IMG/VR virus record: IMGVR_UViG_3300021197_001489
Location: 124,001 to 188,000 of that record
DNA: 64,000 nucleotides
Direction: 5' to 3' (one strand)
Both the position numbers and the translations under genes were made by a program. Below, in pieces: positions 6,442-44,951 of this stretch (position 1 is its first letter; every line of letters begins with the position of its first letter). The notes beneath the pieces were generated by a model that had not been told where the DNA came from, ran no database searches, and saw nothing but the letters and a program-made list of their open reading frames with translations.

Positions 6442-8199
6442 ATGATACAACTTAAAGATCTCACAGTTAAAAACTTCATGAGTGTGGGCAACGCCACACA
6501 AGCTATCAACTTTGATCGACAAGATCTCACATTGGTTCTAGGTGAAAACTTGGACCTTGGCGGCGATGGCAGCCGGAACGGCACTGGCAAGACCACTATC
6601 ATCAATGCACTAAGCTATGCACTGTACGGACAAGCACTGACAAATATCCGACGTGACAACTTGATTAACAAGACCAACAGCAAAGGCATGATGGTTAGTT
6701 TGGATTTCTGTGTTGGTGAACAGTGTTACAGGATTGAGCGCGGTCGTAAACCAAATGTGTTAAAGTTTTATATCAACGACAGTGAACAAGAATCAGACGA
6801 CAATGCACAAGGTGATAGTAGAGAAACACAAGGCGCTATTGAAAAACTGTTAAGCATGAGTCACACTATGTTTAAACACTTGGTAGCATTGAACACATAC
6901 ACCGAACCGTTTTTAAGTCTTAAACAAAACGATCAAAGAGAAATAATTGAACAACTGCTGGGTATAACCTTGCTCAGTGAACGTGCTGACAAGATCAAAG
7001 ATCTAAGCAAGCAAACCAAGGATTCAATCAAAGAAGAAGAAATGTCAATCCGTGCATTGCAAAATGCCAATGACAAAATAGGTGAACAAGTTGAAGCACT
7101 CAAGCGTAGACAAACACTGTGGCAAAACAAAAAAACAGAAGACACAGCCAAGTTCGAACGTGCTATTGAAGACTTAGCACATGTAGACATTGATGAGGAA
7201 CTTAGAGCACACACCGAACTTGCTGACTGGAATACGCTCAACAACGAACAGACACAATTACAAAAAGACATTGCGGCATTGCAAGCACAAGTTAGCAGAG
7301 CTGAACGTGATGTGAAAAAAGCAAACAAAGCTCTGGTAGGATGGCAAGACGGAGTTTGTCACAGTTGCAACCAAAGCATTGAACACTTGGATAGCCACAA
7401 ACAAGAAATTGAAAAGGCAGAGAAGGAACATGACGAAGCAAATAATTTCCTTGGAGAACTACAAGAAGGAATTGAAACGCTCTCAGCTGGAAAAACAGAT
7501 GTCCCAGCAAAACCACGCACTTTCTATGATAGCGCCAATGATGCACACAACCATCGTTCAAGCCTATCAGCACTGGAATTACAACTACAAAATAAACAAG
7601 ATGAAAGTGACCCTTACACCGATCAAATAGCAGACATGGAAACATCAGCAGTGCAAGAAGTTAGCTATGACAAACTCAACGACCTAACACGGTTGCACGA
7701 ACATCAAGACTTCTTGCTCAAACTGTTAACCAACAAAGACAGCTTTGTGCGCAAACGTATCATTGATCAAAATCTAAGTTACTTGAATTCAAGACTAACA
7801 CACTACTTGGACAGAATTGGATTGCCGCACACTGTGATATTCCAGAACGACCTAACTGTAGAGATTCAAGAGCTAGGCAGAGACTTAGACTTTGACAATC
7901 TATCAAGAGGTGAACGTAACAGACTTATACTGAGTATGAGTTGGGCGTTCCGTGATGTATGGGAGAGTTTGTATGGTGCAATCAACTTGCTGTTCATTGA
8001 TGAACTGGTTGATTCGGGTATGGATACATCAGGTGTAGAAGCAAGTTTAGCACTGCTTAAGAAGATGGCCCGTGAACGTGACAAGAGTATTTGGTTAGTA
8101 TCGCACAAGGACGAGCTTGCAGGGCGTGTAAACAACTTGCTTAAAGTTGTCAAAGAAAACGGCTTTACCAGCTATAACACAGATGTTGAAATACTATGA
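6442..8199 (+). CDS. gp46: Recombination ATPase subunit (Rad50/SbcC-like, T4 gp46)
   Basis: Walker A 'NGTGKTT', coiled coil with CHSC zinc hook, signature 'LSRGE', Walker B 'LLFIDE', H-loop 'VSH'. Confidence 0.95.
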   Translation: MIQLKDLTVKNFMSVGNATQAINFDRQDLTLVLGENLDLGGDGSRNGTGKTTIINALSYALYGQALTNIRRDNLINKTNSKGMMVSLDFCVGEQCYRIERGRKPNVLKFYINDSEQESDDNAQGDSRETQGAIEKLLSMSHTMFKHLVALNTYTEPFLSLKQNDQREIIEQLLGITLLSERADKIKDLSKQTKDSIKEEEMSIRALQNANDKIGEQVEALKRRQTLWQNKKTEDTAKFERAIEDLAHVDIDEELRAHTELADWNTLNNEQTQLQKDIAALQAQVSRAERDVKKANKALVGWQDGVCHSCNQSIEHLDSHKQEIEKAEKEHDEANNFLGELQEGIETLSAGKTDVPAKPRTFYDSANDAHNHRSSLSALELQLQNKQDESDPYTDQIADMETSAVQEVSYDKLNDLTRLHEHQDFLLKLLTNKDSFVRKRIIDQNLSYLNSRLTHYLDRIGLPHTVIFQNDLTVEIQELGRDLDFDNLSRGERNRLILSMSWAFRDVWESLYGAINLLFIDELVDSGMDTSGVEASLALLKKMARERDKSIWLVSHKDELAGRVNNLLKVVKENGFTSYNTDVEIL

Positions 8200-9227
8200 G
8201 CCTAGCACTGGATCACTGGCATATTGAAGTAAGCAGCGTTTGCACATTGCAGTGCCCGCGATGTACTCGTGCTGAAGTTCCAGAAACACTGCTTAACCGA
8301 AATCTCAATTTAAAATTTTTTCAAGAACAAATCGGTGAAGAATGGATAACAAAAATTCGCAAAATCACATTCTGTGGCGACGATGGTGATCCAATCTATG
8401 CCAAACAGTTTATCGAAATTGTTGAATGGATCAAAACGGTTAATCCTGATATTCAGCTCTTGATTATCACCAACGGCAGTTATAAAACTGCTGATTGGTG
8501 GCATCGTCTTGCTTGTGTACTCAATGAAAATGACGAGGTTCATTGGAGTTTAGACGGCTGGAATCAAGATAGCAACAGCAAATACAGAGTAAACTGCGAC
8601 TGGGCAAGTATTATGTTGGGCATAATAACTTTTCGTGTTTACAACAAAACCACATACACCGTGGTGGCAAGTATAGCATTTAGATTCAACGAAAACAACT
8701 TGCAAGATATAAAACAGATTGCAACAGATAACAATTTTGATTGTTGGCAACTTACAAAAAGTACAAAATTTGGTAGCAAATATCCAGTCGCTTATGGCAC
8801 AGACGACTTGCTAGAGCCTCTAGATACTGAATTGGTTGCGGCAGGACATCGTTTTGAAAGAACACAATACCCACTGAGCGACAAAACTCGACCAGGAAGC
8901 GATCTCAAAGAGTTGTTTTGGCAACGTGCGCAAAAATTAAATGCAAGCGACGAGTATCCTGCATTGTGCTATATCGGCAATAAAGGTGTATTTTTAAAAA
9001 GCACAGGAGAATTTTATCCGTGTTGCTGGACAGCATTACGCTATCCACATAATACAAAGTGGATCGAGCTTGCAGAAACCAAATTTAACCTGTACAATAG
9101 CACATTGGATCAGATACTAGATGATCCATGGTGGAGTACAGAATTTAGGCAGTTTGACAATCTAGAATGCAAAACAAAATGTATTAAAAGCAAACTTTTG
9201 GATCAGGCTCATGTCACAGAGTGGTAA
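8196..9227 (+). CDS. Radical SAM protein with C-terminal SPASM/twitch-like cysteines
   Basis: CxxxCxxC motif (CTLQCPRC), 'FCGDDGDP', and C-terminal 'CYIG...YPCCW...CKTKC'. Confidence 0.85.
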   Translation: MSLALDHWHIEVSSVCTLQCPRCTRAEVPETLLNRNLNLKFFQEQIGEEWITKIRKITFCGDDGDPIYAKQFIEIVEWIKTVNPDIQLLIITNGSYKTADWWHRLACVLNENDEVHWSLDGWNQDSNSKYRVNCDWASIMLGIITFRVYNKTTYTVVASIAFRFNENNLQDIKQIATDNNFDCWQLTKSTKFGSKYPVAYGTDDLLEPLDTELVAAGHRFERTQYPLSDKTRPGSDLKELFWQRAQKLNASDEYPALCYIGNKGVFLKSTGEFYPCCWTALRYPHNTKWIELAETKFNLYNSTLDQILDDPWWSTEFRQFDNLECKTKCIKSKLLDQAHVTEW

Positions 9228-10187: not shown

Positions 10188-10511
10188 TTAGTATTGGTCT
10201 GGCCAATCTCTATATAGCAAATGTTGAATTGTTTCCATATCAACCATTTGGTTAAAGCCGTGATGCTTTTCTTCGATGTTGTCTGTGTCTGTAACCACAT
10301 GCTTCATGGCATCGTCAAGGTCTTGCATGTTTTTGAATTCCATGTCAATGCGCCACTCACCAACATCCATGCTCCTGAAGCCCAGTTTCATTCTGGTAAT
10401 ACGATAGCTTTGCATGGTAGGCAGTGCATCCAAGAACTTTTTCATATTGGTTACAAATTCATGTGGGTTAACGCCTTCTTTTACGTCACAGTAGATAGTG
10501 TAAACGTCCAT
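10188..10511 (-). CDS. Small alpha/beta-barrel-like protein (recalls DUF6614-type proteins)
   Basis: 'MDVYTIYCD...YRITRMKLGF...LYRDWPD'; family call from memory, unverified. Confidence 0.5.
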   Translation of the reverse strand: MDVYTIYCDVKEGVNPHEFVTNMKKFLDALPTMQSYRITRMKLGFRSMDVGEWRIDMEFKNMQDLDDAMKHVVTDTDNIEEKHHGFNQMVDMETIQHLLYRDWPDQY

Positions 10512-10963
10512 TATTTGACTCCTAAGTTGTCTGATGGAAATATTGTGAATCCATCTATTTGTTTCTTGTATTCATGTGCTTCGCCTAGTATTATCAACTC
10601 GTAACCCAACTCTTTGTATATTGCACATTCGGTTTTCATACTAGCAATGCCCAGTTTCAGTTTTGGATTGCGATAATCCCATGCAAACTGTAGAGCTTCA
10701 ACTGCTCGATTGTTTATCTTGTACATCATACTCCAGGCAACAAGGTCGTTGTTGTCGTAGTATGCTATTATGTCGTTGTGTTCTGCTACAAACTCTTCTT
10801 GATAGATTGGCCACACACTTTTGAATTTTTTATAATCAGCATACTGTTGATAGATTGTGAGCATTTGACTGGTTTTGGCATATCTTTCGTCTTGCAACAA
10901 TATCTTGTGATTGGTTTCTGCTGTGTAGTCAGTATCTGCGAGGTTTATGTAGCAGTAAGTCAT
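10511..10963 (-). CDS. GNAT-fold protein resembling the C-terminal domain of aminoacyl-tRNA-protein transferases (ATE/Bpt-like)
   Basis: 'IAYYDNNDLVAWS...QFAWDYRNPKLKLG...E...KELGYELIILGEAHEYK'. Confidence 0.55.
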   Translation of the reverse strand: MTYCYINLADTDYTAETNHKILLQDERYAKTSQMLTIYQQYADYKKFKSVWPIYQEEFVAEHNDIIAYYDNNDLVAWSMMYKINNRAVEALQFAWDYRNPKLKLGIASMKTECAIYKELGYELIILGEAHEYKKQIDGFTIFPSDNLGVK

Positions 10964-11460
10964 CTTGGGTCTTCTCTGTTTGTAAACAAACCTTGCAAAT
11001 ACTGTTCATCCCAGCCATTGTAAAAACCTTTTTTACCAAGCAGCTTGGCATGACTGTGTAATTTGCTGAGGCTTTGCACCAATGCTAGTGCATACTTACC
11101 CTGATTGAACTGTACCCCTTTGACCATTTCTACATTTTCTGGATGATCAGCCAGTGCCAACATGTCTATGGGTACCAGTGTTTCTTCGTTGATGCTGTCA
11201 ACTGCATCTTCAAAATCGTCTGGTGCATACCCTTGTGGATTGTATGCATAAATGTACACATCTTGGTCTCCCATGCCTTCTTGTGCAACATCTAGCATGT
11301 CAGCGTACAAATCTGTTCCGATACGCACAGTGTACTTGTTTTCCAGACGTGCTTTTCTGGCATAAGGGCATGGTGCCCAGTTGCCCAGTGCAGGATGCGG
11401 CACTTCTACAAAGTTGATCAACCAAGATTCAATGTCAGCTTTTACGTCATCTATTACCAA
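10960..11460 (-). CDS. DUF1415-like protein
   Basis: 'W...FVE......LGNWAPCPYARKA' and 'ADHP' resemble the family's CPFA and FHP motifs. Confidence 0.5.
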   Translation of the reverse strand: MVIDDVKADIESWLINFVEVPHPALGNWAPCPYARKARLENKYTVRIGTDLYADMLDVAQEGMGDQDVYIYAYNPQGYAPDDFEDAVDSINEETLVPIDMLALADHPENVEMVKGVQFNQGKYALALVQSLSKLHSHAKLLGKKGFYNGWDEQYLQGLFTNREDPR

Positions 11461-11630
11461 AACGGTTGTCCAGTCTTTTTTGCAGTCTCAAGGTTCTCTT
11501 TGATTAACTTGCCCATTGATTCGCGTTCACTTACGCTCATTTGTACAATCTCACTGTAAGTCACACCACCTCGCATAAACCAGCAAATCTTGAGCATGTC
11601 TTCTTTGAGGCCCTTAACTTCTTTGTCCAT
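11454..11630 (-). CDS. Small baseplate/tail assembly chaperone-like ORF (gp51- or gpT-like); possibly made mainly as a frameshift extension
   Basis: 'ICWFMRGGVTYSEIVQMSVSERE'. The ATG at 11630 has a weak RBS, and the frame stays open upstream across the gp26-like stop. Confidence 0.6.
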   Translation of the reverse strand: MDKEVKGLKEDMLKICWFMRGGVTYSEIVQMSVSERESMGKLIKENLETAKKTGQPFW

Positions 11631-11677
11631 CTTTTCAACTATGTGTTCAATTTCGTCGGGGGATGATGTTAAGAGCC

Positions 11678-12514
11678 TTATACGAAAAAATTTGCAACAT
11701 TCATTGTGAATGGTGTGTCGTATTCGTGTTTGCAATCTGCACAAGTAATATGCAGCGGTTCTACTGCGCCAGTTTGCTTGATGTCTTCAATTTTCTTGCG
11801 AATCTTATCAAATGCTTTGCTTTCGCAGTTGCGAATGTATTCTTCAATGTGGTCTTTGTCCACAACAAGGTCATCACCAGCTTTGATCATGCTAATGCTT
11901 TGGGAAATGGCACTCAGTGTTAAATGACTGATATTTGTGAATGCTTGTTGTAACAGTTCTAGTTTTTCAGATTCAGGAATTTCCGCGGTTGGCAGCGTCT
12001 CTAACATTTTTTGGTCTTGAAACTGTGCAGAGTTGTTTTCGTTTTGTTCTTTGTAGGTAAGTGGGCGAAAGTGTATTTCGACATCTCCTGCAACAACTGG
12101 CTGTGAAAAGTCTGGTGACTTTATCCGTTCCATAATATCTCTTAGATCAATAGCAAAGTTGTTTTCTTCTTCACATTTTGGACACTTGCTGGTAAATTCC
12201 ATTTCATGCCCATAACTGGCTATTCTCATAGCAATCAACAGTGTGTCAAGATCCAATGTACTGGTCTGCCAAGCGTCTTTGTATGCAGGAACACAGCTTT
12301 CAATAACACTGGCAATGGCACTGCCGTTAAACAGCGCATCAGCAGTTCTATATGTAATCTCATCCAGTGCTGTCATTGGGTAGATTGGCAATTCGCCGTT
12401 TTCTGGCATTGTCAACTGTGACTCGTCATTGAAGGCGCCGCCACTGGGTAACTTGATATAGATGCTGGGTTGCCTGAAATGTTTTGCCAGCGGATTTGGG
12501 TTAGTGTTTGACAT
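11678..12514 (-). CDS. gp26: Baseplate hub assembly protein (T4 gp26-like)
   Basis: 'NPLAKHFRQPSIYIKLPSGG...MTALDE', two CxxC pairs (CPKC, CADC); likely ATG at 12514. Confidence 0.8.
   Translation of the reverse strand: MSNTNPNPLAKHFRQPSIYIKLPSGGAFNDESQLTMPENGELPIYPMTALDEITYRTADALFNGSAIASVIESCVPAYKDAWQTSTLDLDTLLIAMRIASYGHEMEFTSKCPKCEEENNFAIDLRDIMERIKSPDFSQPVVAGDVEIHFRPLTYKEQNENNSAQFQDQKMLETLPTAEIPESEKLELLQQAFTNISHLTLSAISQSISMIKAGDDLVVDKDHIEEYIRNCESKAFDKIRKKIEDIKQTGAVEPLHITCADCKHEYDTPFTMNVANFFV
11684..11693 (-). promoter_or_regulatory. Putative -1 programmed frameshift site (A AAT TTT TTC)
   Basis: Two overlapping X XXY YYZ heptamers in the correct phase, ending one codon before the gp26-like stop; the -1 frame is open for 76 more codons. 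Confidence 0.6.
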
Positions 12515-12580
12515 GTTTTTTCCTACCATAAATATATGTATAACGTACTTATACGACGTAAAAATGGGCAAAAATTAAAT

Positions 12581-14668
12581 ATGGATGAAGAAAGCAACAG
12601 ATTACTTGCAGAAGTTTTAGCAGAACTGAAAAAATCAGGCGGCGATGCTAATGCTCCTGGTGCTGCAAAAGCTATAAAAGATATGAATGCTTATTCAATG
12701 GCGCAAACTCGCGGCACCAAAGCCACTGACGCTAATACAAAATCAACTGACAAGAATACTACTGCTAGCGGCGCGGCAGCCAAAGGGCTGTACAAAATGT
12801 CAACTGGCGCCGCTGATGCTACGAGAACATTCGTAGAAGCAGCCGGTTCTGTTAGAGAAAACAGAGAAAATTTTGAAAGTTTAAATCCTGCTATTAAGTT
12901 GACAGGCAATGCTGTCAGCATGGTAGGCAAGGGTGCTGGCTTAGCTGCCGATGCACTGGGAGATGCAGTGCCTGTAATTGGCAGCTTTATCAGTGCCGGT
13001 GGAAAAATGGCGGCTGCAATTACGCAAGCAGCCGGAGAAATTATCAACACTGTAGGACCTATGCTCACAGCAGAATTGCAACGTGCAAGTGAGGCATTTA
13101 GAGCTGCTGGTTCAGTTGGTGCGCTTGGTGCAGACGGACTGTCTGGGCTTGCCAAGCAGTCTATCCAAGCAGGATTGAGTTTTAGTACATTCAGTAAAGT
13201 TGCTGCAGAAGGCGCAGAAGGATTAACATTTGCATTTGGTGACAGTGCAACTGGTGTAAAGCGTTTTGCTGATGCTTCAGAAGCAATGCGTCCGTTTAGA
13301 CGCGGTTTGTTAGCAATGGGTGTAAGTGCTGAAAGCCAAAATGAACTTACAGCCAAGTATATTCAGCTACAAGCCAGGCAAGGCAATATAGAAGGTAGAA
13401 GTTCTAGAGATCTTGCTCAAGGATCAGCAAATTATATCAAACAGTTGACAGCGTTAAGCAGACTCACTGGTAAAAGTGTTGATGAGCAACAAAAAGCCAT
13501 GGATGAACAGATGCGCAACGTGCGTATGGCAGCCGCAGTCGCTGACGTACAAAGCAGACTAGGTGAAGATGCTGCCAATGCAATGAAAAACACCACAGCG
13601 GCTATAACTTCGATGGCTCCTAACATTGGCAAAGGCTTGCAGGATGCACTCAGTGGCAACTTAGGCACAGAAGCTGCACAAGAATTCCAGCTAGCAGCAG
13701 GCGAAATGGGTGCGCAAGCAGTTGATATGTTGCGCAAGGGAACGATCACTCAAGAAGAAGCTACTGCAATGATCCAAGAGGGTGTCAAAAAGCAAGCGGA
13801 AGCCATTGGCGGCCCAGCTACCATTGGTTCAATTGCAGGATTAGGCACAGCGTTTGACAATGTGTTAGGCGATATGCTCTCAATGGGACAGAGAACCACA
13901 TTAACTGCCTCGCAGATTGAAAATCTTGGTACACAACAGGAAAACTTAGCAAACACCACAGACGCTACAACCAGTTCAATGATTGATGCAAATGAAAGCA
14001 TGCTGAAAGCTGCAACAGCTCTTGACGAATTAGCATTAGGAACCACATTGCCACTAGCTGCTAAAGGCATTGATGTGTTTACCGATGGCATGGTGGTAGC
14101 AACAAAAGCCATGCTGGAGTTTGCTGGACTGAGTCCAGAAGAAATTGAGGCTAAACTAGGTGACGACGCCAAAGAAGCTGGTGGAAACTTTGTAGACGAA
14201 AACAAAGCTGAACTAATCGGTGCTGGTATTGGAACGGTTGTAGGTGGTGCAATTGGACTATTAGGCGGCCCACTTGGTGTAGCTGTTGGAGCAAGTGTTG
14301 GAGCATCACTTGGCGGTATATTTGGGGGTTTCTTCGGCGGCAATAGAGCTGTTGGTGGACCAGTTGATTCTGGAAAAATGTATGTGGTTGGTGAACAAGG
14401 CCCAGAGATTCTTCTAAGTGGAGCATCCGGAACAGTTGTACCAGCTACTGCCGGTCCAGCAGGCGGGTATAACAGCCCAGATCTTGGCAGTGCTGTATCA
14501 AGTTCACTAGGGACAGCACAGTCAGCAACTGCCGCAGCAGGTGGATCAGCTGGTGGCGCAAACAATGCACTCATGGAAGCCAGTGTAAACAGACTGGATC
14601 AACTTGTATCGGCTATGAGTCGCAACAACGACATCAACACCAAAATACTTCAAGCAGCGCATCGATAA
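12581..14668 (+). CDS. Tape measure protein-like
   Basis: Ala/Gly/Gln-rich helical protein of 695 aa with C-terminal 'RAVGGPV...YVVGEQGPE' motif; ATAAATA promoter at 12528-12534. Confidence 0.75.
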   Translation: MDEESNRLLAEVLAELKKSGGDANAPGAAKAIKDMNAYSMAQTRGTKATDANTKSTDKNTTASGAAAKGLYKMSTGAADATRTFVEAAGSVRENRENFESLNPAIKLTGNAVSMVGKGAGLAADALGDAVPVIGSFISAGGKMAAAITQAAGEIINTVGPMLTAELQRASEAFRAAGSVGALGADGLSGLAKQSIQAGLSFSTFSKVAAEGAEGLTFAFGDSATGVKRFADASEAMRPFRRGLLAMGVSAESQNELTAKYIQLQARQGNIEGRSSRDLAQGSANYIKQLTALSRLTGKSVDEQQKAMDEQMRNVRMAAAVADVQSRLGEDAANAMKNTTAAITSMAPNIGKGLQDALSGNLGTEAAQEFQLAAGEMGAQAVDMLRKGTITQEEATAMIQEGVKKQAEAIGGPATIGSIAGLGTAFDNVLGDMLSMGQRTTLTASQIENLGTQQENLANTTDATTSSMIDANESMLKAATALDELALGTTLPLAAKGIDVFTDGMVVATKAMLEFAGLSPEEIEAKLGDDAKEAGGNFVDENKAELIGAGIGTVVGGAIGLLGGPLGVAVGASVGASLGGIFGGFFGGNRAVGGPVDSGKMYVVGEQGPEILLSGASGTVVPATAGPAGGYNSPDLGSAVSSSLGTAQSATAAAGGSAGGANNALMEASVNRLDQLVSAMSRNNDINTKILQAAHR

Positions 14669-14713: not shown

Positions 14714-16459
14714 ATGTCTTGGAAAAAATACTTTAAAGTTGTAGACAACGCAGGCGGACAACTTTCTCCTATAAGCGGACAAAACAACCGTGGTCCAAGT
14801 TATGGATCTGGCGGTTCAGGTGGACAGTTTGGTTTTAAAAACTATCAAAGCCATTTGCCTGAAGTATACTCAGGACATCCTAATAGAATTGAACGCTATA
14901 ATCAATATGAAAACATGGATAGCGACAGTGAAATCAATGCCTGCTTGGATATTATCTCAGAGTTTAGCACACAAACAAACGAAAGCAACAACACACCGTT
15001 TGAAGTTGAGTTTACAGACACTCCAACAAACAACGAAGTTGAAATTATTCGCAAGCAGTTGCAACAGTGGACCAAGCTAAACAAATTTGATCAACGAATG
15101 TTCCGCATCTTTCGCAACACGCTGAAGTATGGAGATCAAGTGTTTGTGCGTGATCCAGAAACATTTGAACTGTACTGGGTCGACATGACCAAAGTGGTGC
15201 GTGTCATTGTAAATGAAAACGAAGGCAAACTTCCTGAGCAGTATGTTATTAGAGACATCAATCCCAACTTTCAAAATATGAGCATTGCGCCTAAACAAAC
15301 CACCGACTATGGCACTGGCACAAATTCAGGACAAATTATTGGCACTGGCGGCAGCAACATGGGCGGCTCAAACTATACCGTACCAAATATGCCCAGTGGG
15401 CAAAGTAGATTTGAACACACTGTAAACGAAACAGTCATTGATGCTAAAAATATTGTGCATCTTGGTCTCAGTGAAGGTTTGGATTTTTTCTGGCCGTTCA
15501 GCCAAAGTGTGCTAGAAATGATATTCAAAGTGTTCAAGCAAAAAGAACTGCTTGAAGATTCAATACTGATATATCGTGTGCAACGTGCGCCAGAGCGCAG
15601 AGTGTTTTACATTGACGTAGGCAATATGCCAAGTCATCTTGCTATGCAGTTTGTGGAGCGTGTGAAAAACGAAGTTCACCAAAGACGTATTCCAAATCAG
15701 CAAGGCGGACAAGCCGGCACTACAATGGATACCACATACAATCCGCTTTCAATCAATGAAGATTACTTCTTTCCGCAGACAGCAGAAGGCAGAGGTTCAA
15801 AAGTTGAAACATTACCCGGTGGTGAAAATCTTGGACAGATTGATGATTTAAAATACTTCAATAACAAGATGTGCAGAGGCCTGCGTGTTCCTAGCAGCTA
15901 CTTGCCAACTGGTCCAGATGATAGCGATCGTCCAATGAATGATGGTCGTGTTGGCACAGCACTTATACAAGAATACAGATTCAATCAGTACTGTGAAAGA
16001 CTGCAAAAGCAGGTTATACAACATCTTGATGATGAATTCAAAATGTTTATGCGTTGGAGAGGCTTTAATATTGACAACAGTCTGTTTGCAATTAAGTTTG
16101 CAGCACCGCAAAACTTTGCCAGTTATCGTCAAGCTGAGCTTGATACAACAAGAATGCAGGCATTTAGCGCATTAGAACAATTGCCCTATATGAGCAAGCG
16201 TTTTCTCATGAAGCGTTACTTGGGATTGACTGACGATGAACTGCAAGAAAACACAGAAATGTGGAGTGAAGAAACTGCACAGCCTGTTGACACACAGCCG
16301 GAAGGCAGTGATTTGCGTACAGTTGGTGTTAGCCCAGGTGATTTTGAAGGTGACATTGAAATGGGAGATGCTGTTAGCGCAGAAGCAGAAGGCGGCGAAG
16401 CAGTTGATGTCAATGTTGATATGGCTGCACCAGCAACACCAGAAGCACCGCCGGCATAA
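14714..16459 (+). CDS. gp20: Portal protein (T4 gp20)
   Basis: 'LLEDSILIYRVQRAPERRVFYIDVGNMP' and 'EDYFFPQTAEGRGSKVETLPGGENLG'; promoter ATAAATA at 14671-14677. Confidence 0.95.
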   Translation: MSWKKYFKVVDNAGGQLSPISGQNNRGPSYGSGGSGGQFGFKNYQSHLPEVYSGHPNRIERYNQYENMDSDSEINACLDIISEFSTQTNESNNTPFEVEFTDTPTNNEVEIIRKQLQQWTKLNKFDQRMFRIFRNTLKYGDQVFVRDPETFELYWVDMTKVVRVIVNENEGKLPEQYVIRDINPNFQNMSIAPKQTTDYGTGTNSGQIIGTGGSNMGGSNYTVPNMPSGQSRFEHTVNETVIDAKNIVHLGLSEGLDFFWPFSQSVLEMIFKVFKQKELLEDSILIYRVQRAPERRVFYIDVGNMPSHLAMQFVERVKNEVHQRRIPNQQGGQAGTTMDTTYNPLSINEDYFFPQTAEGRGSKVETLPGGENLGQIDDLKYFNNKMCRGLRVPSSYLPTGPDDSDRPMNDGRVGTALIQEYRFNQYCERLQKQVIQHLDDEFKMFMRWRGFNIDNSLFAIKFAAPQNFASYRQAELDTTRMQAFSALEQLPYMSKRFLMKRYLGLTDDELQENTEMWSEETAQPVDTQPEGSDLRTVGVSPGDFEGDIEMGDAVSAEAEGGEAVDVNVDMAAPATPEAPPA

Positions 16460-24672: not shown

Positions 24673-27600
24673 ATGGCCATTGCAAGAGTCACCGGTAAAG
24701 CACTCGCAGACAATCTTGAGAGAACAACCAATTTAGCTGTCGATACAAGTACATTGTTTATTGACGTGACTAACAATCGTGTTGGCATTGGTACTATTAC
24801 TCCAACACAGTCTTTAACTGTTCCAGGAAATGCTAATATTGCAAATATTTCTATTGCAGGAAATGCAATTTCAGCAGAAGGCAATCTCAATTTAAGCGGC
24901 AGTAACGTAAATCTTGGTGCTAATACCGGAATTACTATTACTGGCGGAACAACTGGCCAGGTACTTACTACTAACGGAAGTGGTGTATTAAGTTGGACTA
25001 CTGGTGCAAATGTATCGAGTGTGTTAGGTAACACAATCGACCTTGGCACACCAGCTGATGGAAGTTTAACTGGAAATGTTGCATATGACGGTTTTACTAC
25101 TACAAGTAAGGTCACTGACAGCATAGATGATCTTAACCAAGTAATATTAAATGTTGGAAACAGCACTTTTGTAGGACAAGCAAGTTTTACAGGAACACCA
25201 GTTAGCGGACCAAGTCCAACAACTGTAGACTTTACTGGAACATTTACTGGCAATGCAACCTCATTTGAATGGAACTTTGGCGATGGGAACACTTCAACTT
25301 CGCAAAATCCATCACATACATATAACGATGCAGCCGGTGGTACGTTTACAGTTGTATTCACTGCAAAAAACACAGATGGAACATTTTCTGGAAACATCGC
25401 TGCAGGGGCAAAAGGCAGTGCAGATAGTTTCACAAGAACAAATTATATCACACTGTTTACACCAACTCCTATTCCAAGTTTCACACTTACTGATAGTACC
25501 ATCGACTCAGGTGCTACTGCAACTATTACTAACACAAGTCAATTTGTCACAACCAGTTTTACACTAGATTGGGGACAAGGTGCAAACGTAAATCCTGCAA
25601 CAGATTTTACAACTGTCAACAACACATACACCAACACAGGTGGTGACACACAGTATCAAATTGTTCTTACTGGAGTATCAAACACTGCTGGTGCTAGTCC
25701 TGTAACAGTGAACAGTGCGCCAACTACTATAAGTGTGTTTACTGCACAAACAACACTATCCAGTGCTAACGTGGTTCGTGTAGTCAATGAAGAAGCAACA
25801 TCAGGTGGTGTTGTGCAGTTTACAAATAGTACTGCAACTGCCCCAGGAACAACTGCACTATTTGGCAGCGGTCAAAAATACAGATGGACTTGGGGAGATG
25901 GTAATGTTGATAGTGTAAACATACAAACAGGCGTAGCGGGCAATCCAGGATCAACTCTTGATCATACATTTGCATTGAGCAGTGTGCAACAAGCCGCTGG
26001 CACAACCGCAACATACGCAGTCCAGCTATCAACACTTACTGGTCATACAAGTAGTCCATTTAATGCAGCCAATATTGCAATAGCACTTGAGCCTGATATA
26101 CGCAGTATTTTTACCGGTACAACTGTTATTGCTAGTGATAAAACAGGTGACAATGCACAAGATGGTTATTTGTTTACAGACTACAGATCAGGACTCTCTA
26201 CCACTGATAGAGGATTAGTTACATTCCAAAACACAAGCCAAAACGTTACAACCACTAATTTCACATTTGGTGATGGTAATACAACCGGCGCTATCACAAG
26301 TGGTGCTGGTACACCAGGAGCAGCCAATATAACAAACAGCTACGGAAGCGTTGCTTCGTTCACTGTGGCATTGGTATCAAGTGGTACACCAGATACTATT
26401 GCACAAACAGACACAGAAACAAAAACAAACTTTATAACTATTAACGCTAATCCTGCTGCACCTACAGCACTGAGTGGCAAAACGCTTAGTATGTCAACTG
26501 GCAGTCAAGGAACTGCTCCGTTGCTGGCAGCAAGTGCCACTGACAGAAGCAGTGGTAACATACCAGCAAATGGTACCAGTGTTACAAGATATACAACTGC
26601 TGATCCAATTGTTACAAGTACAGTCACTGATGCAAACACTGCAATCTCTGGGACACTAACTGCAACATTTAACAATTCAGCTTCAGGCGCAGTTACGTTT
26701 ACTGCCAGCGGCGATGGTGCAGGAACATATACTGACTTGGTAGTAGTCAACGATGGCGACGCACATGATGAAATAAGTGCTAGTACCTATCCAACAGGGT
26801 TTGCAAAAGTATTTGATGCTCGCGTTTCAAAAGCCACTAGCGGAATAAGTGTAGGATACAATGATACAAGTCTGATACACTCAACTGCTGGCGTAACAAA
26901 CACTGTTGGTTTTGTAAAAGATGATATGGTTAGTGTGCCAACAGTAAATCAAGGCGCGGCAACCATTACCCAAGGAACTGCAGGAACATTTAGATATATT
27001 TCAGGAGTGCCTTATTACAACACCGGTTCTCCTACGGTAAACGTTGCAGGGTTGACAGTGTCAAACTTTGTAGGACAAACATATAGAGATACAACCACAC
27101 CATTTCAATCTACAACTGGTACACTTGCAGAAAGCACCACGGGTAGTATTATTGCAACACAAACTAAAACCTACGCTAACATCGATGGAGCACCAACTTT
27201 CTTAACTGGCGGCATTCCAATTGCCGGTACTGGTGTTGGCAGTGCATATACTTTAGGAACTGTTAGTTTAGCAATTAACGGAACTGCTAGGGCTGTAGGG
27301 TATCTTGACGCGCAGATGTTCAACGTAAATGGTAATAGCAGTATTGTTGATCTTACTAACAAATATATACAAATTTATAGTGCAAGTTTAACTGGGTTTG
27401 ACGAAGAAAATATTCCAGTAGCAGATGCACTTGGTACAACCTTTGATGATGACGGAAAGCGTGTAACCGGCTTTGGCAGTTTTGCTGATACTCCTAGTTT
27501 TGCAGGCGGCACAGATTACTATACTTCAAATGTTTTTACAGGAGCAGTTACAGTAGCAGGAACTTCGGAAGCAATAGTACGTTTTGGAACACTAAAACAT

Positions 27601-28059
27601 TTTGTTACAAACCTAAGCAGTGGGTATCTGCCTGCAGGTCCAGATCTAGCTACAAGCAGATCAGGTAATCAGTACATAACTTTTGCATTTAGAAGAGCAA
27701 CTGTAGCAAACTTTGACATAGCAATTAACAGTAGTACTGGAGTTAAGGGTGTGTTTATAGGAGCACCTGGTACGGCAATTGACACTGCTAGTGGATTGAA
27801 TGGATGGGTAAGCGGTAGTACACAGTATGCTGGTTCGGGTGTGCCGGGCAGTGATACTGGTAATGGCGGCAACGGCAGTAATGGTTGTGCTTTAACAGGG
27901 GCAGACGTTATTCCAACAGACACAGGCATCAATGCTTCTTATACCATGACACTAGGAAGTGAGAATAGTTCAAACGCTACAGGAAACAATGTGCTAGTGC
28001 GTATTGCATTAGGCTCAGGCCAAACTCTTACCAGTGTTAGTGTAGGAGAACAAACCTAA
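24673..28059 (+). CDS. Large PKD-domain virion/adhesin protein
   Basis: PKD motif 'SGPSPTTVDF...FEWNFGDGNTSTSQNPSHTY' and further W/FGDG repeats; ATAAATA at 24641-24647. Confidence 0.75.
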   Translation: MAIARVTGKALADNLERTTNLAVDTSTLFIDVTNNRVGIGTITPTQSLTVPGNANIANISIAGNAISAEGNLNLSGSNVNLGANTGITITGGTTGQVLTTNGSGVLSWTTGANVSSVLGNTIDLGTPADGSLTGNVAYDGFTTTSKVTDSIDDLNQVILNVGNSTFVGQASFTGTPVSGPSPTTVDFTGTFTGNATSFEWNFGDGNTSTSQNPSHTYNDAAGGTFTVVFTAKNTDGTFSGNIAAGAKGSADSFTRTNYITLFTPTPIPSFTLTDSTIDSGATATITNTSQFVTTSFTLDWGQGANVNPATDFTTVNNTYTNTGGDTQYQIVLTGVSNTAGASPVTVNSAPTTISVFTAQTTLSSANVVRVVNEEATSGGVVQFTNSTATAPGTTALFGSGQKYRWTWGDGNVDSVNIQTGVAGNPGSTLDHTFALSSVQQAAGTTATYAVQLSTLTGHTSSPFNAANIAIALEPDIRSIFTGTTVIASDKTGDNAQDGYLFTDYRSGLSTTDRGLVTFQNTSQNVTTTNFTFGDGNTTGAITSGAGTPGAANITNSYGSVASFTVALVSSGTPDTIAQTDTETKTNFITINANPAAPTALSGKTLSMSTGSQGTAPLLAASATDRSSGNIPANGTSVTRYTTADPIVTSTVTDANTAISGTLTATFNNSASGAVTFTASGDGAGTYTDLVVVNDGDAHDEISASTYPTGFAKVFDARVSKATSGISVGYNDTSLIHSTAGVTNTVGFVKDDMVSVPTVNQGAATITQGTAGTFRYISGVPYYNTGSPTVNVAGLTVSNFVGQTYRDTTTPFQSTTGTLAESTTGSIIATQTKTYANIDGAPTFLTGGIPIAGTGVGSAYTLGTVSLAINGTARAVGYLDAQMFNVNGNSSIVDLTNKYIQIYSASLTGFDEENIPVADALGTTFDDDGKRVTGFGSFADTPSFAGGTDYYTSNVFTGAVTVAGTSEAIVRFGTLKHFVTNLSSGYLPAGPDLATSRSGNQYITFAFRRATVANFDIAINSSTGVKGVFIGAPGTAIDTASGLNGWVSGSTQYAGSGVPGSDTGNGGNGSNGCALTGADVIPTDTGINASYTMTLGSENSSNATGNNVLVRIALGSGQTLTSVSVGEQT

Positions 28060-31000
28060 TGGCATTAGCTGATAGCACCAAAGTAGATTTTTTATGGAAG
28101 AAACTTGGATTTGGAGTTACTAAAACTGCTCCAAATGCTAACAAGCAGGCATTCAACGAGAGTATTCCATCACCACTGTTGATGCGTGGCGATAAAGTAT
28201 GGCAGAGTTCTGGAAGTATACCAGCAGTGAAGCCTGCGGCTACAAGCAGTATTGTACAAATATATCAAGATGCAGCTGGCGGATCAGCCACTATAGAAAC
28301 CACAGAAGATCTCAGTGCACCAGACAATAGGACTTGGAAAACAAACATCACTGATTGGATACCAACTGAATTTGGATCAACCTACTTGGTGAAAGTTTAT
28401 GTTGATGATGCAGGAGAAGCCGCACCACAAAGCACAGGAACACAGCTATTCCAAGCTGGATCAGGGAACGACGATGAATGGTTTTTTGATTACTCGTCGG
28501 GAGTTTTAAACTTTAATGGTACTAACATTCCTTCAGTAATAGGAACTGGTGTCACAGGAAAGTCTGTGTACATTGTTGGTGCAAGATATGTAGGGCCATT
28601 TGGTGTAGGAGGCGGCACCGGTATAGGTAACTTAACTGTTACTGACACAACTTTTACCACAGATAATGCTGGTAGTAATATAGGATTTACTACAACAGGG
28701 CAAGGCACAATTGAAATAAACAATACCACGGCTATAAAAGTTTCTGTTGGTACAACGGCACAACGACCAACAACACCAACAACCGGTGATTTAAGATTTA
28801 ATTCAACCACTGGATTTGCTGAAGTTTATGATGGTTCGGCCTGGACCAGCTTTGGCAACGACTTTGGCACCATTACAACTCAGACTCTCAATGGGGATAA
28901 CAGCACTGTTGCATTTACGCTGGACCAAGCAGCAAGTACAGCAGGAATTATTGTTAGTATCAACGGTACAATGCAACAACCAGTGACTGCATACAGTGTA
29001 AGCGGAACAACAATAACTTTTACTGAGGCACCAGAGACTGGGGATGCAATTGAAGTAAGATTTATCACACAACTTACTACGTTTACTTCTATTCAAAATA
29101 CCAGTGGCAATGCTATTGTTAGCACCTTAGACACTGCCCCCACAGTACAGATCACTGGAGATTTACTACCAGCCGCAGATGGTACTCAAGATCTAGGTAG
29201 CGCAAGTAAACATTGGCTAGATGCTCATTTAGGAAAAGTTATCTTTTATGATGCTGATGATTCAAATACAGTATCATTGGCAGCTCCGGCGACGGTGGGT
29301 TCAAATGTAGAATTTACCTTACCAGCCGCAGATGGATCAGCTGGACAAACAATTGTTACTGACGGTTCGGGTGCATTGAGTTTTGCTGACAACACATCTG
29401 TAGTTACAGTAGCAAGTGATACAGCCACAAACGCAGAGAGATTGATCTATGTTGGTGCTACAACAACAGGCACTTTGTCAAATGTTACACAGGACAGTGG
29501 ACTTACATACAACCCAAGTACCGGTACTATAACAAGTGCTGAGTTTATAGGTGGCGGCGCTGGGTTAACTGGGTTAAGCGGAAGTGCTATTGCTTCAGGT
29601 ACTGTGGCAGCGGCTAGAGTAGCAACGCTCAACCAAAACACCACTGGTAGTGCAGCCACATTAACCACTACTAGAGCAATTGAAGTAAGTGGTGCTGTCA
29701 CTGGTACTGCCAATTTTGACGGTAGTGCAGCAATCAACATTGTTACAACTGCAACTAGTGATCCAACTATCACACTTGGTGGTGATTTAAGTGGTGCTGT
29801 AACACTAACAAACTTAGCAAGTGGTACCTTAACCGCAACTGTTGGCACACTTAATCAAAGCACCACTGGTAGTGCGGCTACTTTAACAACAGCAAGAGCT
29901 ATTGCACTCACTGGTGACGTAACCGGTACCGCCGACTTTGACGGCAGTGCAGGCATTAGTATTGCAGCAACAATCGCTGCAAATAGTGTTGCACTAGGCA
30001 CCGATACAACTGGAGACTATGTTGGGACGATCACAGGAGGTACTGGCATTGACTCAACAGGGGCAACCTCAGGTGAAGGTATTGCACATACATTATCAAT
30101 TGACAGCACCGTTGCTACACTTACTGGTTCGCAAACATTAACAAACAAAACACTTGGTGCTACTACAATGAGTGGCAATTTAGATGCCGATTCTAACGGC
30201 ATCACTAACCTGGCAACTCCTTCGGCGGCAACTGATGCAGCTAACAAATCATATGTTGACGGGGTTGCCCAAGGACTTGATGTAAAAGCATCAGTGGTAA
30301 ATGCCAGCACAGCAAACTTAACACTAAGTGGTGAACAAACTATTGATGGTGTTTTGACCAGTACCAGTAGGATTCTAGTTAAAGACCAAAGCACTGCCAG
30401 TCAAAATGGCATTTATGTAACAGCCGCTGGCGCCTGGGCTCGCAGTGCAGATATGGACAACTGGTTAGAAGTACCAGGTGCATTTGTGTTTATCGAGCAA
30501 GGCACAACACAAGCCGATACAGGGTTCGTTTGTACTGCTAACGGTGGTGGAACAATTGGTTCAACAGCTATGCCGTGGACACAGTTCAGTGGACAAGGAA
30601 CATTTACAGCCAGCACTGGGTTAACATTAACTGGAACGGCATTCAGTATCACCGATACAGCAGTAACACCTGCAAGTTATGGTAGTACCACTGCAATACC
30701 GACTTTTACTGTTAATCAACAAGGACAACTTACAGCCGCAGGAACTACAGCTACTAGCGCACTTACTGGTCTTAGTGGAACGGCAATATCTTCGGGTACC
30801 GTGGCAGCGGCCCGGGTTGCAACATTAAACCAAAACACAACTGGAAGTGCAGCCACGCTTACCACTGCTAGAGCAATTGAAATAAGTGGCGATGTAACAG
30901 GTACCGCCGACTTTGATGGCAGTGCTGCTATCAATATTGCAGCAACCATTGCAGCTAACAGTGTAGCACTTGGAACCGATACAACTGGTAACTATGTTGC

Positions 31001-31550: not shown

Positions 31551-31616
31551 ACAAAAGCGCATCACACAGTACCACTTGAAACAAATATATCCATTAAATT
31601 AAAATATTGTTACTCG

Positions 31617-31729
31617 ATAAATACGTTTATAATGTACGCTGGCGGCGATAAAGCCCAAGGGTGATTGTACCGCAGCTGATGCAACATTATACTAAATTAC
31701 ATGCTTTGGTATAATGGAGAACCTACAAA
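31617..31729 (+). promoter_or_regulatory. Late promoter plus structured leader with alternative pairings
   Basis: ATAAATA at 31617-23. TATAATGT (31628-35) pairs with ACATTATA (31684-91), or ATTATACTAA (31686-95) pairs with TTGGTATAAT (31706-15) next to the GGAGA RBS. Confidence 0.5.
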
Positions 31730-38392: not shown

Positions 38393-38412
38393 TCAATAGA
38401 AACTATTTGGAG

Positions 38413-38440
38413 AAATAGCACCTTGGGGTGCTATTTTTTT
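38413..38440 (+). terminator. Rho-independent terminator
   Basis: AAATAGCACC-TTGG-GGTGCTATTT plus T run. Confidence 0.9.
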
Positions 38441-38485
38441 GACTACAGTATCCGATAAATACTGCAAAGATAAGGATTGCTATAA

Positions 38486-41539: not shown

Positions 41540-41563
41540 AAAAATGAAAGCAGGAATTAGCTA

Positions 41564-44526: not shown

Positions 44527-44951
44527 AATTGCTTAACTGTATCAATTTTGCCTAACACTTCTTCAAAATTAATAGTAGTCCACAAACCTGGGTGCAACGG
44601 TTTTGGCCATATGCCCGATTCAACCCATGCATAACCATGATGTTCGTTGTTAAGCACAGGCGTAAACTCCGTACTTACTAAACAAAAAAATGTATTGTAA
44701 CTGAAATGGTTGTCAGCACTGGTAAACTTTTCAATCGGCACAAGTTGAATAACTTCGGGCCACATGCCAATTTCTTCTTGGCATTCTCGTTGTATTGCTT
44801 CTTGTAGGTTTTCGCCATGATCAACTTTGCCACCTGGTAATCCCCAGCATCCGGGATTTTTTGGATCATTGCGTAGTAGGTATAGATATCTATTGGTGTT
44901 TACACTGTAAAACCAAACGCCAACAGCGTCAATCAAAGTACCAAACTCCAT
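44493..44951 (-). CDS. NUDIX hydrolase
   Basis: NUDIX box 'GGKVDHGENLQEAIQRECQEEIG'. Confidence 0.9.
   Translation of the reverse strand: MEFGTLIDAVGVWFYSVNTNRYLYLLRNDPKNPGCWGLPGGKVDHGENLQEAIQRECQEEIGMWPEVIQLVPIEKFTSADNHFSYNTFFCLVSTEFTPVLNNEHHGYAWVESGIWPKPLHPGLWTTINFEEVLGKIDTVKQFHISHFDTKLP

What the first reader, a model, noticed from the sequence alone, without database searches (positions are those of the whole stretch)
11454..12514. Putative -1 frameshift fusing the gp26-like protein to the next ORF (lambda G/GT-like)
Seen: the gene ends GCA AAT TTT TTC GTA TAA, which contains two in-phase slippery heptamers (A AAT TTT and T TTT TTC, 11693-11684). A -1 slip reads ...NFF-RIRLLTSSPDEIEHIVEKMDKEVKG...QPFW, giving a 353-aa fusion versus the 278-aa product. 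The downstream ATG (11630) lacks a clear SD, and the gene pair is divergently adjacent to the tape measure gene. Established: tail assembly chaperones of long-tailed phages use such frameshifts (lambda G/GT), whereas T4 gp26 and gp51 are treated as separate genes. Inference: this T4-like lineage uses the G/GT strategy.
Basis: partly seen in the sequence, partly recalled or inferred. Interest (0 to 1): 0.75.

Follow-up and report, generated by a model that had tools for sequence, protein, structure and literature searches.

The report
Conserved frameshift in tail chaperone gene
A marine jumbo phage very probably makes a short and a long form of its T4 gp26/gp51-like tail-assembly protein from one gene by a programmed backward ribosome slip at TTTTTTC, a strategy already described for long-tailed and some T4-like phages, so this is a solid but not new kind of finding.

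Summary
The minus-strand gene 12514..11678 (278 aa, PF12322 T4_baseplate) ends AAT TTT TTC GTA TAA. The -1 frame is open from the heptamer to 11457, which gives a 353-aa fusion.

Evidence that the shift is real:
- In the window and 83 related loci (72 distinct sequence contexts, down to 25-34% protein identity), T TTT TTC is invariant and in phase, 1-4 codons before the stop.
- Third-codon-position variability switches from frame 0 to frame -1 exactly at the heptamer.
- The 76-residue extension is conserved from its first codon.
- 52 of 73 loci have no start codon there.
- Some relatives carry the extension in frame as the C-terminus of 319-351-aa proteins, next to a second, short paralogue. 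That is the T4 gp26 (short) / gp51 (long) arrangement. The window's genome has a single PF12322 gene.

A stem starting 5-6 nt downstream of the conserved heptamer is predicted, but the support is only suggestive. The divergent 710-aa neighbour is a probable tape measure protein.

Papers citing Vladimirov et al. [quoted passage not shown] This is therefore a new member of a known kind, not annotated in the four related phage records examined. Ribosomal slippage has not been distinguished experimentally from transcriptional slippage.

The parts
11678..12514 (-). Short form (frame 0) of the gp26/gp51-like protein, 278 aa, ending ...NFFV*
   Evidence: Matches PF12322 at 1.6e-19 (70.9 bits, cut-off 24.5) and phrog_150 baseplate hub at 9.7e-25. 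AF2 model has pLDDT 86.6 with a disordered C-terminus at residues 273-278. BFVD hits named 'baseplate hub assembly protein, T4-like' have TM 0.85-0.91. Four Cys (C111, C114, C258, C261) are invariant.
11684..11690 (-). Slippery heptamer T TTT TTC (X XXY YYZ), the proposed -1 shift site
   Evidence: Invariant and in phase in the window and all 83 related loci, 72 distinct contexts, at 2.0 bits per position.
11687..11693 (-).
   Evidence: The preceding codon is AAT in only 30 of 72 contexts; the others are AGT, CAT, ACT, GAT or GCT.
11457..11684 (-). -1 frame extension, 76 codons (RIRLLTSSPDEI...KKTGQPFW); stop at 11454-11456
   Evidence: Ungapped alignment A3 of 66 sequences with mean column identity 66%. 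The wobble position is in the -1 frame from the first codon, CGN. AF2 gives a four-helix domain at pLDDT 86.8. The extension is found in frame at the C-terminus of 319-351-aa proteins.
11454..12514 (-). Long form, 353 aa: residues 1-277 in frame 0 joined to 76 residues in frame -1 (base 11684 read twice)
   Evidence: Inferred. No protein-level data.
11668..11678 (-). 5' arm (AGGCUCUUAAC) of the predicted stimulatory stem, starting after a 5-nt spacer from the heptamer
   Evidence: The MFE stem of 11 bp is seen in the window and in L006, L008, L009, L010 and L011. Across the family, nt 7-13 after the heptamer have pairing probability 0.89 against 0.71 in codon-shuffled controls. Suggestive only.
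11608..11618 (-). 3' arm (GUUAAGGGCCU) of the predicted stem
   Evidence: L011 has GUUAAGAGCCU, which turns a U-G pair into U-A.
12536..14668 (+). Probable tape measure protein, 710 aa, divergent neighbour
   Evidence: phrog_1538 tape measure at 2.8e-5. PDB 9ki1_g 'probable tape measure protein' at E 0.018 on a Gly-rich segment. Atlas neighbours carry tape-measure Pfam families at score 0.93. The syntenic protein is annotated as a structural protein in PA5oct (with an ESI-MS/MS note) and in 121Q.
14714..16459 (+). T4-like portal (gp20), context
   Evidence: PF07230 at 3.7e-106.
10960..11460 (-). Next gene downstream (166 aa, phrog_28122, function unknown); its start overlaps the end of the extension

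Best explanation
The gene encodes two proteins with a shared N-terminus. Most ribosomes terminate at TAA 11680-11678 and make the 278-aa short form. A fraction slip back one base on U UUU UUC (11690-11684), where both tRNA-Phe re-pair UUU/UUC to UUU/UUU. These ribosomes read CGU AUA AGG... in the -1 frame and add a 76-residue helical domain, giving a 353-aa long form. A stem starting 5-6 nt downstream probably stimulates the slip.

The pair is the single-gene equivalent of T4 gp26 (short) and gp51 (long). By analogy with lambda G/GT, and from the reported identification of T4-like tail assembly chaperones, the shared domain would bind the tape measure protein encoded next door. The extension would then recruit another tail or hub component during tail initiation.

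Shown by sequence comparison: the conserved heptamer, the frame switch of selection, and the existence of in-frame long forms. Inferred: that the slip is ribosomal, its efficiency, the role of the stem, and the chaperone function.
For: 1. T TTT TTC is invariant in the window and 83 related loci, including four phage isolates at 27-34% identity (Atu_ph07, Phosso, 121Q, PA5oct), while the position of the frame-0 stop varies from 1 to 4 codons downstream.
2. The least-conserved codon position moves from frame 0 to frame -1 exactly at the heptamer. The first -1 codon is CGN in 71 of 72 contexts.
3. 52 of 73 distinct loci have no ATG, GTG or TTG in the -1 frame between the upstream stop and extension codon 5. 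In 6 loci the -1 frame opens at the heptamer itself.
4. A profile search with the extension finds it as the in-frame C-terminus of 319-351-aa proteins. The junction there reads ...xF-R-N-K-I-L on non-slippery codons.
5. Two contigs examined that encode such long forms each carry a short and a long PF12322 gene in tandem; on the longer contig (L088) the pair is divergent from a 741-aa gene, the same locus layout as here.
6. T4 gp26 and gp51 both match PF12322 end to end, and gp51 has an extra 48-aa tail. The T4 gp26 Phe-Phe pair is encoded by non-slippery TTC TTT.
7. The gp51 tail aligns weakly but consistently with the end of the extension: hhalign E 0.0018, and HMMER 8-12 bits against 3 or less for reversed controls.
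8. The window's 316-kb genome has only one PF12322 gene.
9. Predicted downstream pairing is enriched.
10. Citing papers state that T4-like phages make short and long tail-assembly-chaperone forms either from two genes (PMC10274946) or at poly-T slippery sites (PMC12846349). Both cite Vladimirov et al. 2022.
Against: - No protein, ribosome-profiling or reporter data exist for this phage or its cultured relatives.
- The RNA reads available were fragmentary assembler contigs and say nothing about slippage.
- No consensus RNA structure was found across the family. The 3' partner of the stem differs between clades, and part of the pairing signal is a composition effect.
- Three isolates have an ATG overlapping the stop (ATGA or TAATG), which would allow translational coupling there.
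- The N-domain fold matches no solved structure, including known tail assembly chaperones.
- No Pfam tail-assembly-chaperone family matches.
- The gene is divergent from the tape measure gene, not upstream of it.
- Homology of the extension to the gp51 tail is weak.
Confidence: 0.8

Rival explanations
1. The same long protein is made by transcriptional slippage. RNA polymerase adds one U in the U6 run, and ordinary translation of that mRNA gives ...NFFR....
For: The shift site is a homopolymer run, and adding one base gives the identical product. The conserved C after the run is required anyway by the Arg codon, so the sequence alone cannot discriminate. The title of Vladimirov et al. [quoted passage not shown]
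Against: The run is only six T in all 72 contexts and never longer. From general knowledge, efficient bacterial transcriptional slippage usually needs about 8-9 identical bases. The run is always in the X XXY YYZ phase. The predicted stem sits 5-6 nt downstream, which is the spacing typical of ribosomal -1 signals. DNA contigs show no length variation at the run.
Confidence: 0.08
2. The downstream ORF is a separate small gene, translated from ATG 11630 (58 aa), from TTG 11744 (96 aa), or by termination-reinitiation at the stop of the gp26-like gene. No fusion protein is made.
For: An ATG at extension codon 20 is present in 56 of 73 loci. Atu_ph07, Phosso and 121Q have an ATG overlapping the stop. 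Gene callers and GenBank records list small stand-alone ORFs.
Against: The 20 codons before that ATG are conserved in the -1 frame, starting at the heptamer. 52 of 73 loci have no start codon near the junction, and 17 of 73 lack the ATG at codon 20. The window has ATA, and PA5oct has no start codon, at the position where the three isolates have ATG. Upstream of the heptamer the -1 frame shows no coding signature, so the TTG 11744 ORF is not supported. The invariance of the heptamer would be left unexplained. In-frame long forms exist.
Confidence: 0.04
3. The frameshift is real, but the two products are baseplate-hub assembly factors with a role unlike lambda G/GT, with no tape measure binding. 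The resemblance to G/GT lies only in the decoding trick.
For: T4 gp26 and gp51 were classically described as hub subunit and hub assembly catalyst (feature table). The fold has no match among solved structures. There is no hit to a Pfam tail-assembly-chaperone family. The orientation is divergent from the tape measure gene.
Against: Adjacency to the probable tape measure gene is conserved in the window, three of the four isolates examined and L088. In T4 the tape measure protein gp29 is itself a hub component encoded in the gene 51 operon. Citing papers report that the T4-like genes were identified as tail assembly chaperones.
Confidence: 0.15
4. Sequencing or assembly error in a homopolymer, or a decaying gene.
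For: Homopolymer runs are error-prone.
Against: The same six-T run and the same two-frame layout appear in 83 related sequences, from independent metagenome contigs and four phage isolates. Independent DNA contigs from two other runs show no indel there. Both frames are under purifying selection.
Confidence: 0.01

Closest known systems
Lambda gpG / gpGT tail assembly chaperones (Xu, Hendrix, Duda 2004; reviewed in PMC5009743)
   Same: One gene gives a short major product and a longer minor product by a -1 shift at an X XXY YYZ heptamer a few codons before the stop. The gene is next to the tape measure gene. The added C-terminal part is a separate small domain.
   Different: There is no detectable sequence or fold similarity to solved structures or to Pfam tail-assembly-chaperone families. 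The shared domain is much larger (277 aa) and has a four-Cys motif. The heptamer is U UUU UUC, whereas I recall lambda using G GGA AAG. The gene is divergent from the tape measure gene. Binding partners are untested.
T4 gp26 and gp51 (PF12322), reported as the tail assembly chaperones of T4-like phages (Vladimirov, Gautam, Davidson 2022, Virology 566:9, PMID 34826709; known here only through the citing papers PMC10274946 and PMC12846349)
   Same: Same protein family. T4 gp26 ends three residues after a Phe-Phe pair, like the short form here. gp51 continues after the aligned Phe with a tail (F-KLL-xNPDE...Y..SI..M.P.ER...L.EKD) that resembles the extension. In T4 the pair sits at the head of the operon that holds the tape measure gene 29.
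   Different: T4 uses two separate paralogous genes on opposite strands, and its Phe-Phe pair has non-slippery TTC TTT codons. This phage has one gene plus a frameshift. The gp51 tail is 48 aa, against 76 aa here.
Tandem short and long PF12322 genes in uncultured relatives (loci L087, L088)
   Same: Same locus layout, divergent from a 741-aa gene (seen on L088). The extension is the same, at E about 1e-22 to the profile.
   Different: The long form is a continuous ORF with non-slippery junction codons (AGT TTC CGT; AAC TTT CGT). The short paralogue has lost the Cys motif.
Tail assembly chaperone frameshift of Pakpunavirus/Andersonviridae myoviruses (PMC12846349) and P2 E/E+E'
   Same: A conserved -1 shift at a T-rich motif at the 3' end of the short-form chaperone gene of contractile-tailed phages. 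The downstream part is routinely mis-annotated as a hypothetical protein.
   Different: The motif there is GTTTTT and the protein family differs. That gene lies upstream of the tape measure gene in the same orientation.

Membership tests
PF12322 T4_baseplate (T4 gp26/gp51 family) | Profile match above the curated cut-off | tested here: met
   70.9 bits against a cut-off of 24.5, E 1.6e-19, profile positions 42-218 of 219. phrog_150 matches at 9.7e-25.
PF12322 T4_baseplate (T4 gp26/gp51 family) | Same predicted fold as annotated T4-like baseplate hub assembly proteins | tested here: met
   BFVD hits at E 1e-21 to 1e-24 with TM 0.85-0.91; further hub proteins of diverse myoviruses match at E down to about 1e-5.
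PF12322 T4_baseplate (T4 gp26/gp51 family) | Paired CxxC ... CxxC cysteines | tested here: met
   C111, C114, C258 and C261 are invariant in 71 sequences. T4 gp51 has CPKC and a Cys-Cys pair, and T4 gp26 has C.C and CPEC. Metal binding was not tested.
Tail assembly chaperone pair made by -1 programmed frameshift (lambda G/GT type) | [quoted passage not shown] | tested here: met
   T TTT TTC lies 1-4 codons before the stop in the window and all 83 related loci. The extension is 76 codons.
Tail assembly chaperone pair made by -1 programmed frameshift (lambda G/GT type) | Evolutionary conservation of the site and of the extension as protein | tested here: met
   The codon-position signature switches at the heptamer. 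A3 has mean column identity 66%. In-frame fusions exist in relatives.
Tail assembly chaperone pair made by -1 programmed frameshift (lambda G/GT type) | Both products actually made, with the long form as the minor fraction | not testable with these tools
   No proteomics is available. The RNA contigs are fragmentary.
Tail assembly chaperone pair made by -1 programmed frameshift (lambda G/GT type) | Gene immediately upstream of, and co-oriented with, the tape measure gene | tested here: not met
   The gene is adjacent but divergent: start codons at 12514 (-) and 12536 (+). Three of the four isolates examined and L088 have the same layout.
Tail assembly chaperone pair made by -1 programmed frameshift (lambda G/GT type) | Sequence or fold similarity to characterised tail assembly chaperones | tested here: not met
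   No Pfam tail-assembly-chaperone family matches. There are no PDB sequence hits. Foldseek against PDB gives best E 0.22. VIA-align matches only a helical hairpin at Z 8 or less. A missing match does not prove a different fold.
Tail assembly chaperone pair made by -1 programmed frameshift (lambda G/GT type) | Shared domain binds the tape measure protein; extension binds the tube or another tail protein; absent from the virion | not tested
   There is only an indirect hint. In the PA5oct record the neighbouring portal and 798-aa protein carry ESI-MS/MS notes, and the hub-like gene does not.
Two-gene (gp26 + gp51) solution of T4 | Two PF12322 paralogues in the genome, one short and one long | tested here: not met
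   A six-frame search of the 316-kb genome (91% complete) finds one PF12322 locus.

The most novel reading that the evidence does not exclude
The gp26/gp51 family may not be homologous to the lambda-type chaperones: a 277-aa fold with four conserved Cys and no solved relative. If so, the short-plus-long decoding strategy arose independently in it. Within this one family the strategy has then been swapped between a U UUU UUC frameshift (jumbo-phage clade) and gene duplication (tandem in L087/L088, divergent in T4). That would make it a natural system for asking why a fixed ratio of two forms is needed. It also remains open whether the shift here is ribosomal or transcriptional.
Probability: 0.25. 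Interest if true: 0.55.

Novelty: new member of a known kind. Interest (0 to 1): 0.35.

Why it matters
- It corrects the annotation of a core tail-assembly gene across a large clade of jumbo myoviruses (the 121Q/PBECO4, RaK2, PA5oct, Atu_ph07 and Phosso groups, and several hundred metagenomic contigs). There the long form is missing or its tail is listed as a hypothetical small protein.
- It gives a clean natural comparison within one protein family: frameshift against duplicated genes at the same locus. This supports the view that T4 gp26 and gp51 are the short and long forms of one chaperone.
- The invariant U UUU UUC plus a nearby stem is a compact, testable recoding signal for hosts other than E. 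coli.
- It does not change the general picture, which is already in the literature.

Tried and rejected
- DNA-level search of the phage collection with the locus found nothing. Relatives were reached only at protein level.
- Pairwise BLASTP of the -1 ORF against T4 gp51 was not significant (E 0.10). hhalign against single T4 sequences was weak. With family profiles, only the last roughly 30 residues align (E about 0.002).
- PF28602, listed on gp51 homologues, is not in the local Pfam copy, so it could not be scanned against the extension.
- RNAalifold found no consensus structure downstream or upstream of the site. One folding script timed out.
- Read laying gave only short assembler contigs from relatives in the two RNA runs. 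There was no information on slippage or co-transcription, and no indel in DNA contigs.
- Fold searches of the N-domain against PDB, Swiss-Prot AlphaFold models and the VIA-wide set gave no meaningful match.
- The fused 353-aa protein could not be folded as one chain, because a -1 fusion is not a letter-for-letter translation. The two parts were folded separately.
- The Vladimirov et al. 2022 paper is not held, so its content is known only through citing papers. Whether it names gp26 and gp51, or covers this clade, rests on my recollection and.
- No complex prediction was run.
Full report
**What is in the window.**
On the minus strand, an ORF runs from ATG 12514 to TAA 11680-11678 (278 aa). It ends GCA AAT TTT TTC GTA TAA. 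The -1 frame is open from well upstream of this point down to a stop at 11456-11454. The T run is six T followed by C.

The protein matches Pfam PF12322 (T4_baseplate) at 1.6e-19 and phrog_150 (baseplate hub) at 9.7e-25. The small downstream ORF matches nothing.

Divergent from it, with start codons 21 nt apart, lies a 710-aa ORF, followed by a T4-type portal gene. The 710-aa protein is a probable tape measure protein on three weak but concordant grounds:
- phrog_1538 at 2.8e-5;
- a solved 'probable tape measure protein', 9ki1_g, at E 0.018;
- tape-measure Pfam families among its language-model neighbours.

**Where it comes from.**
The window is part of a 316-kb, 91%-complete viral contig. DNA runs holding the locus are mostly marine or seawater metagenomes. 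At protein level its nearest named relatives are jumbo myoviruses at 25-34% identity: Atu_ph07, Phosso, XaC1, the 121Q/PBECO4 group, PA5oct, RaK2, SCTP-2 and others. There is no DNA-level match.

**Is the frameshift signal more than chance?**
I examined four phage isolates and 80 metagenomic viral loci found with a family profile. All of them, and the window, carry xxT TTT TTC in phase, 1-4 codons before the frame-0 stop, except L012, which ends before the site. These make 72 distinct sequence contexts.

- The codon before the run is AGT (35), AAT (30), CAT (3), ACT (2), GAT (1) or GCT (1). That is six different amino acids, always with T in third position.
- Elsewhere in the same genes, T at that position of those codon families is 0.23-0.61, and other Phe-Phe pairs use TTT TTC in 13 of 36 cases.
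- Within the window's large ORFs (about 19,000 codons), in-frame TTTTTTC occurs only here and once in the middle of the portal gene.

**Is the -1 frame translated from the heptamer?**
Per-position information content across the 72 contexts shows the usual pattern of a variable third codon position. That pattern is in frame 0 up to the heptamer and in frame -1 from the very next codon, CGN in 71 of 72 contexts. The position of the frame-0 stop varies (FFV*, FFG*, FFESGS*, FFASAS*), while the -1 peptide FFRxRLL... stays constant. The extension aligns without gaps in 66 distinct sequences at 66% mean column identity.

Independent initiation cannot explain this:
- 52 of 73 distinct loci have no ATG, GTG or TTG in the -1 frame between the upstream stop and extension codon 5.
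- 28 of 73 have none before codon 20.
- In six loci the -1 frame opens at the heptamer itself.
- Upstream of the heptamer there is no -1 coding signature, which also removes the 96-aa ORF starting at TTG 11744.

Three isolates (Atu_ph07, Phosso, 121Q) do have an ATG overlapping the stop, so coupling is possible there. The window (ATA) and PA5oct (no start codon) do not.

**Natural fusions.**
A profile of the extension was searched against 1.84 billion representative proteins and found 452 hits. Most are 40-98-aa gene calls with inconsistent starts. About twenty of the best 150 are proteins of 319-351 aa that carry the extension in frame at their C-terminus. Their sequences show a PF12322-like body, then ...xF-R-N-K-I-L..., then the extension. 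The junction codons are non-slippery: AGT TTC CGT and AAC TTT CGT.

Two such contigs were examined. Each has two PF12322 genes in tandem: a short one (294 or 319 aa, ending FFND* or FFAK*) and a long one (346 or 320 aa). On the longer contig (L088) the pair is divergent from a 741-aa gene, which is the same locus layout as the window. So within this family the same two products are specified either by one gene plus a shift or by two genes.

**Relation to T4.**
T4 gp26 (208 aa) and gp51 (249 aa) both match PF12322 over the whole profile. gp26 ends ...EFFELL*, with TTC TTT codons, which are not slippery. gp51 continues past the aligned position (...DVF-KLLVNPDEIF...) for 48 more residues. gp51 homologues carry a second precomputed Pfam family, PF28602, on that tail; it is not in the local library.

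The gp51 tail consensus is FKLLLNPDExF...Y..SIMxMxPxERxIALSLVEKD. It resembles the extension (FFRIRLLTSSPDEI...TYSEIVQMSVSERESMGKLIKEN). Profile comparison aligns the last roughly 30 residues at E about 0.002. HMMER gives 8-12 bits at gp51 residues 224-248, against 3 bits or less for reversed controls. I regard homology of the tails as probable, not proven.

The window's genome has a single PF12322 locus. This phage therefore lacks the T4-style second gene, consistent with the shift supplying the long form.

**Structure.**
With a 71-sequence alignment, the short form folds confidently (pLDDT 86.6) into a mixed alpha/beta body, with four invariant cysteines. The last six residues, which carry the Phe-Phe pair, are disordered. 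This suits a linker position. The model matches predicted structures of 'baseplate hub assembly protein, T4-like' and hub proteins of many myoviruses (TM up to 0.91). It matches no solved structure and no Swiss-Prot model. The extension folds as a small four-helix domain (pLDDT 86.8).

**Stimulatory RNA.**
No consensus structure is found by RNAalifold. However, the 93 nt after the heptamer fold more stably than shuffles (mean z -2.4, against -0.9 for a control segment). Nucleotides 7-13 after the heptamer (GCCUCC/GGCUCUU) are predicted to be paired with probability 0.91-0.94 in the position profile. Averaged over the segment, the figure is 0.89 against 0.71 when the downstream codons are shuffled, and it is higher than the control in 63 of 72 sequences.

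In the window and its closest relatives, the stem is AGGCUCUUAAC (11678-11668) paired with GUUAAGGGCCU (11618-11608). It has 11 bp and a 5-nt spacer. L011 has one change that improves a pair. Other clades pair GCCUCCU with a GGAGGC further downstream at varying distances. This is suggestive: the sequences are related, and the arm is G+C-rich.

In DNA metagenome assemblies, the 36 nt from 11668 to 11703 (heptamer plus 5' arm) come out as a separate, higher-depth unitig. That fits a segment shared between co-occurring strains.

**Mechanism and rivals.**
- Best reading: tandem -1 slippage of the two tRNA-Phe on U UUU UUC.
- Transcriptional insertion of one U would give the same protein and cannot be excluded from sequence. 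A run of only six, never longer, in constant phase and with a structure at ribosomal spacing makes it less likely. The available RNA data were uninformative.
- A separate small gene, and a sequencing error, are rejected.

**Function.**
That the pair acts as a tail assembly chaperone is inferred from three things:
- adjacency to the probable tape measure gene in the window, three of the four isolates and L088;
- the T4 arrangement, where gene 51 heads the operon that contains the tape measure gene 29;
- the literature, as described below.

No binding was tested. The co-orientation criterion and similarity to known chaperone folds are not met.

**What is already known.**
Vladimirov, Gautam and Davidson (Virology 2022; PMID 34826709) is not held in the library. 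Two citing papers summarise it. One says that some T4-like phages carry one short gene and one longer fused gene instead of frameshifting (PMC10274946). [quoted passage not shown] My results match both statements.

The kind of system is therefore known. This instance, and apparently the whole jumbo-phage clade, is an additional member. The records of Atu_ph07, Phosso, 121Q and PA5oct do not annotate the shift.

**Verdict.**
- Confidence that two forms are made by a shift at this site: about 0.85-0.9.
- Confidence that the shift is ribosomal: about 0.8.
- Confidence in the tape-measure chaperone role: about 0.65-0.7.
- Novelty: new member of a known kind. Interest: moderate to low.

Noticed in passing
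window 8196-9227 (+), next to 6442-8199 (+): A radical SAM / SPASM-like protein (phrog_21308 at 1e-25; Pfam hits below cut-off) is encoded directly after, and overlapping, the SbcC/gp46-like recombination nuclease gene.
   Followed up: no
window 24673-43837 (+): A run of very large ORFs (1128, 1163, 2220, 1017 and 757 aa). Those scanned have tail-fibre, decoration-like or unknown-function PHROG hits; the 2220-aa ORF was not scanned. A tail sheath gene lies at 44933-46333 (-).
   Followed up: partly
window 11668-11703: In DNA metagenome assemblies (runs X1, X5) these 36 nt, the heptamer plus the 5' arm of the predicted stem, form a separate higher-depth unitig, and the flanking contigs break there. 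This suggests the segment is identical among co-occurring strains.
   Followed up: partly
window 15484-15490 (+), inside the portal gene: This is the only other in-frame TTTTTTC in a large ORF of the window. It lies mid-gene, 323 codons before the stop. There is no evidence that it is used.
   Followed up: no
L001 (Atu_ph07), L002 (Phosso), L003 (121Q), L004 (PA5oct): The public records annotate the short form as baseplate hub or hypothetical protein. The extension appears as a small hypothetical protein in Phosso and 121Q, only partly in Atu_ph07, and not at all in PA5oct. None annotates a frameshift.
   Followed up: yes
L087:820-1704 and L088:4931-5890: In the two-gene relatives, the short paralogue has lost the CxxC...CxxC cysteines that the long paralogue and all frameshift-type genes keep. 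L087's short gene still ends TCT TTT TTC AAT GAC TAA, a possible relic slippery site with no open -1 extension.
   Followed up: partly
window 10188-10511 (-) and 10511-10963 (-): Downstream in the same strand block lie a DUF6614 protein (1.3e-20) and a 150-aa protein with a sub-threshold hit to the C-terminal domain of arginine-tRNA-protein transferase (E 0.001, below cut-off).
   Followed up: no
window 12514-12536: The start codons of the gp26-like gene and the divergent probable tape measure gene are only 21 nt apart, so their promoters must lie inside each other's coding sequence. TATAAGTA, which from memory resembles the T4 late promoter consensus TATAAATA, lies upstream of the gp26-like start.
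   Followed up: no
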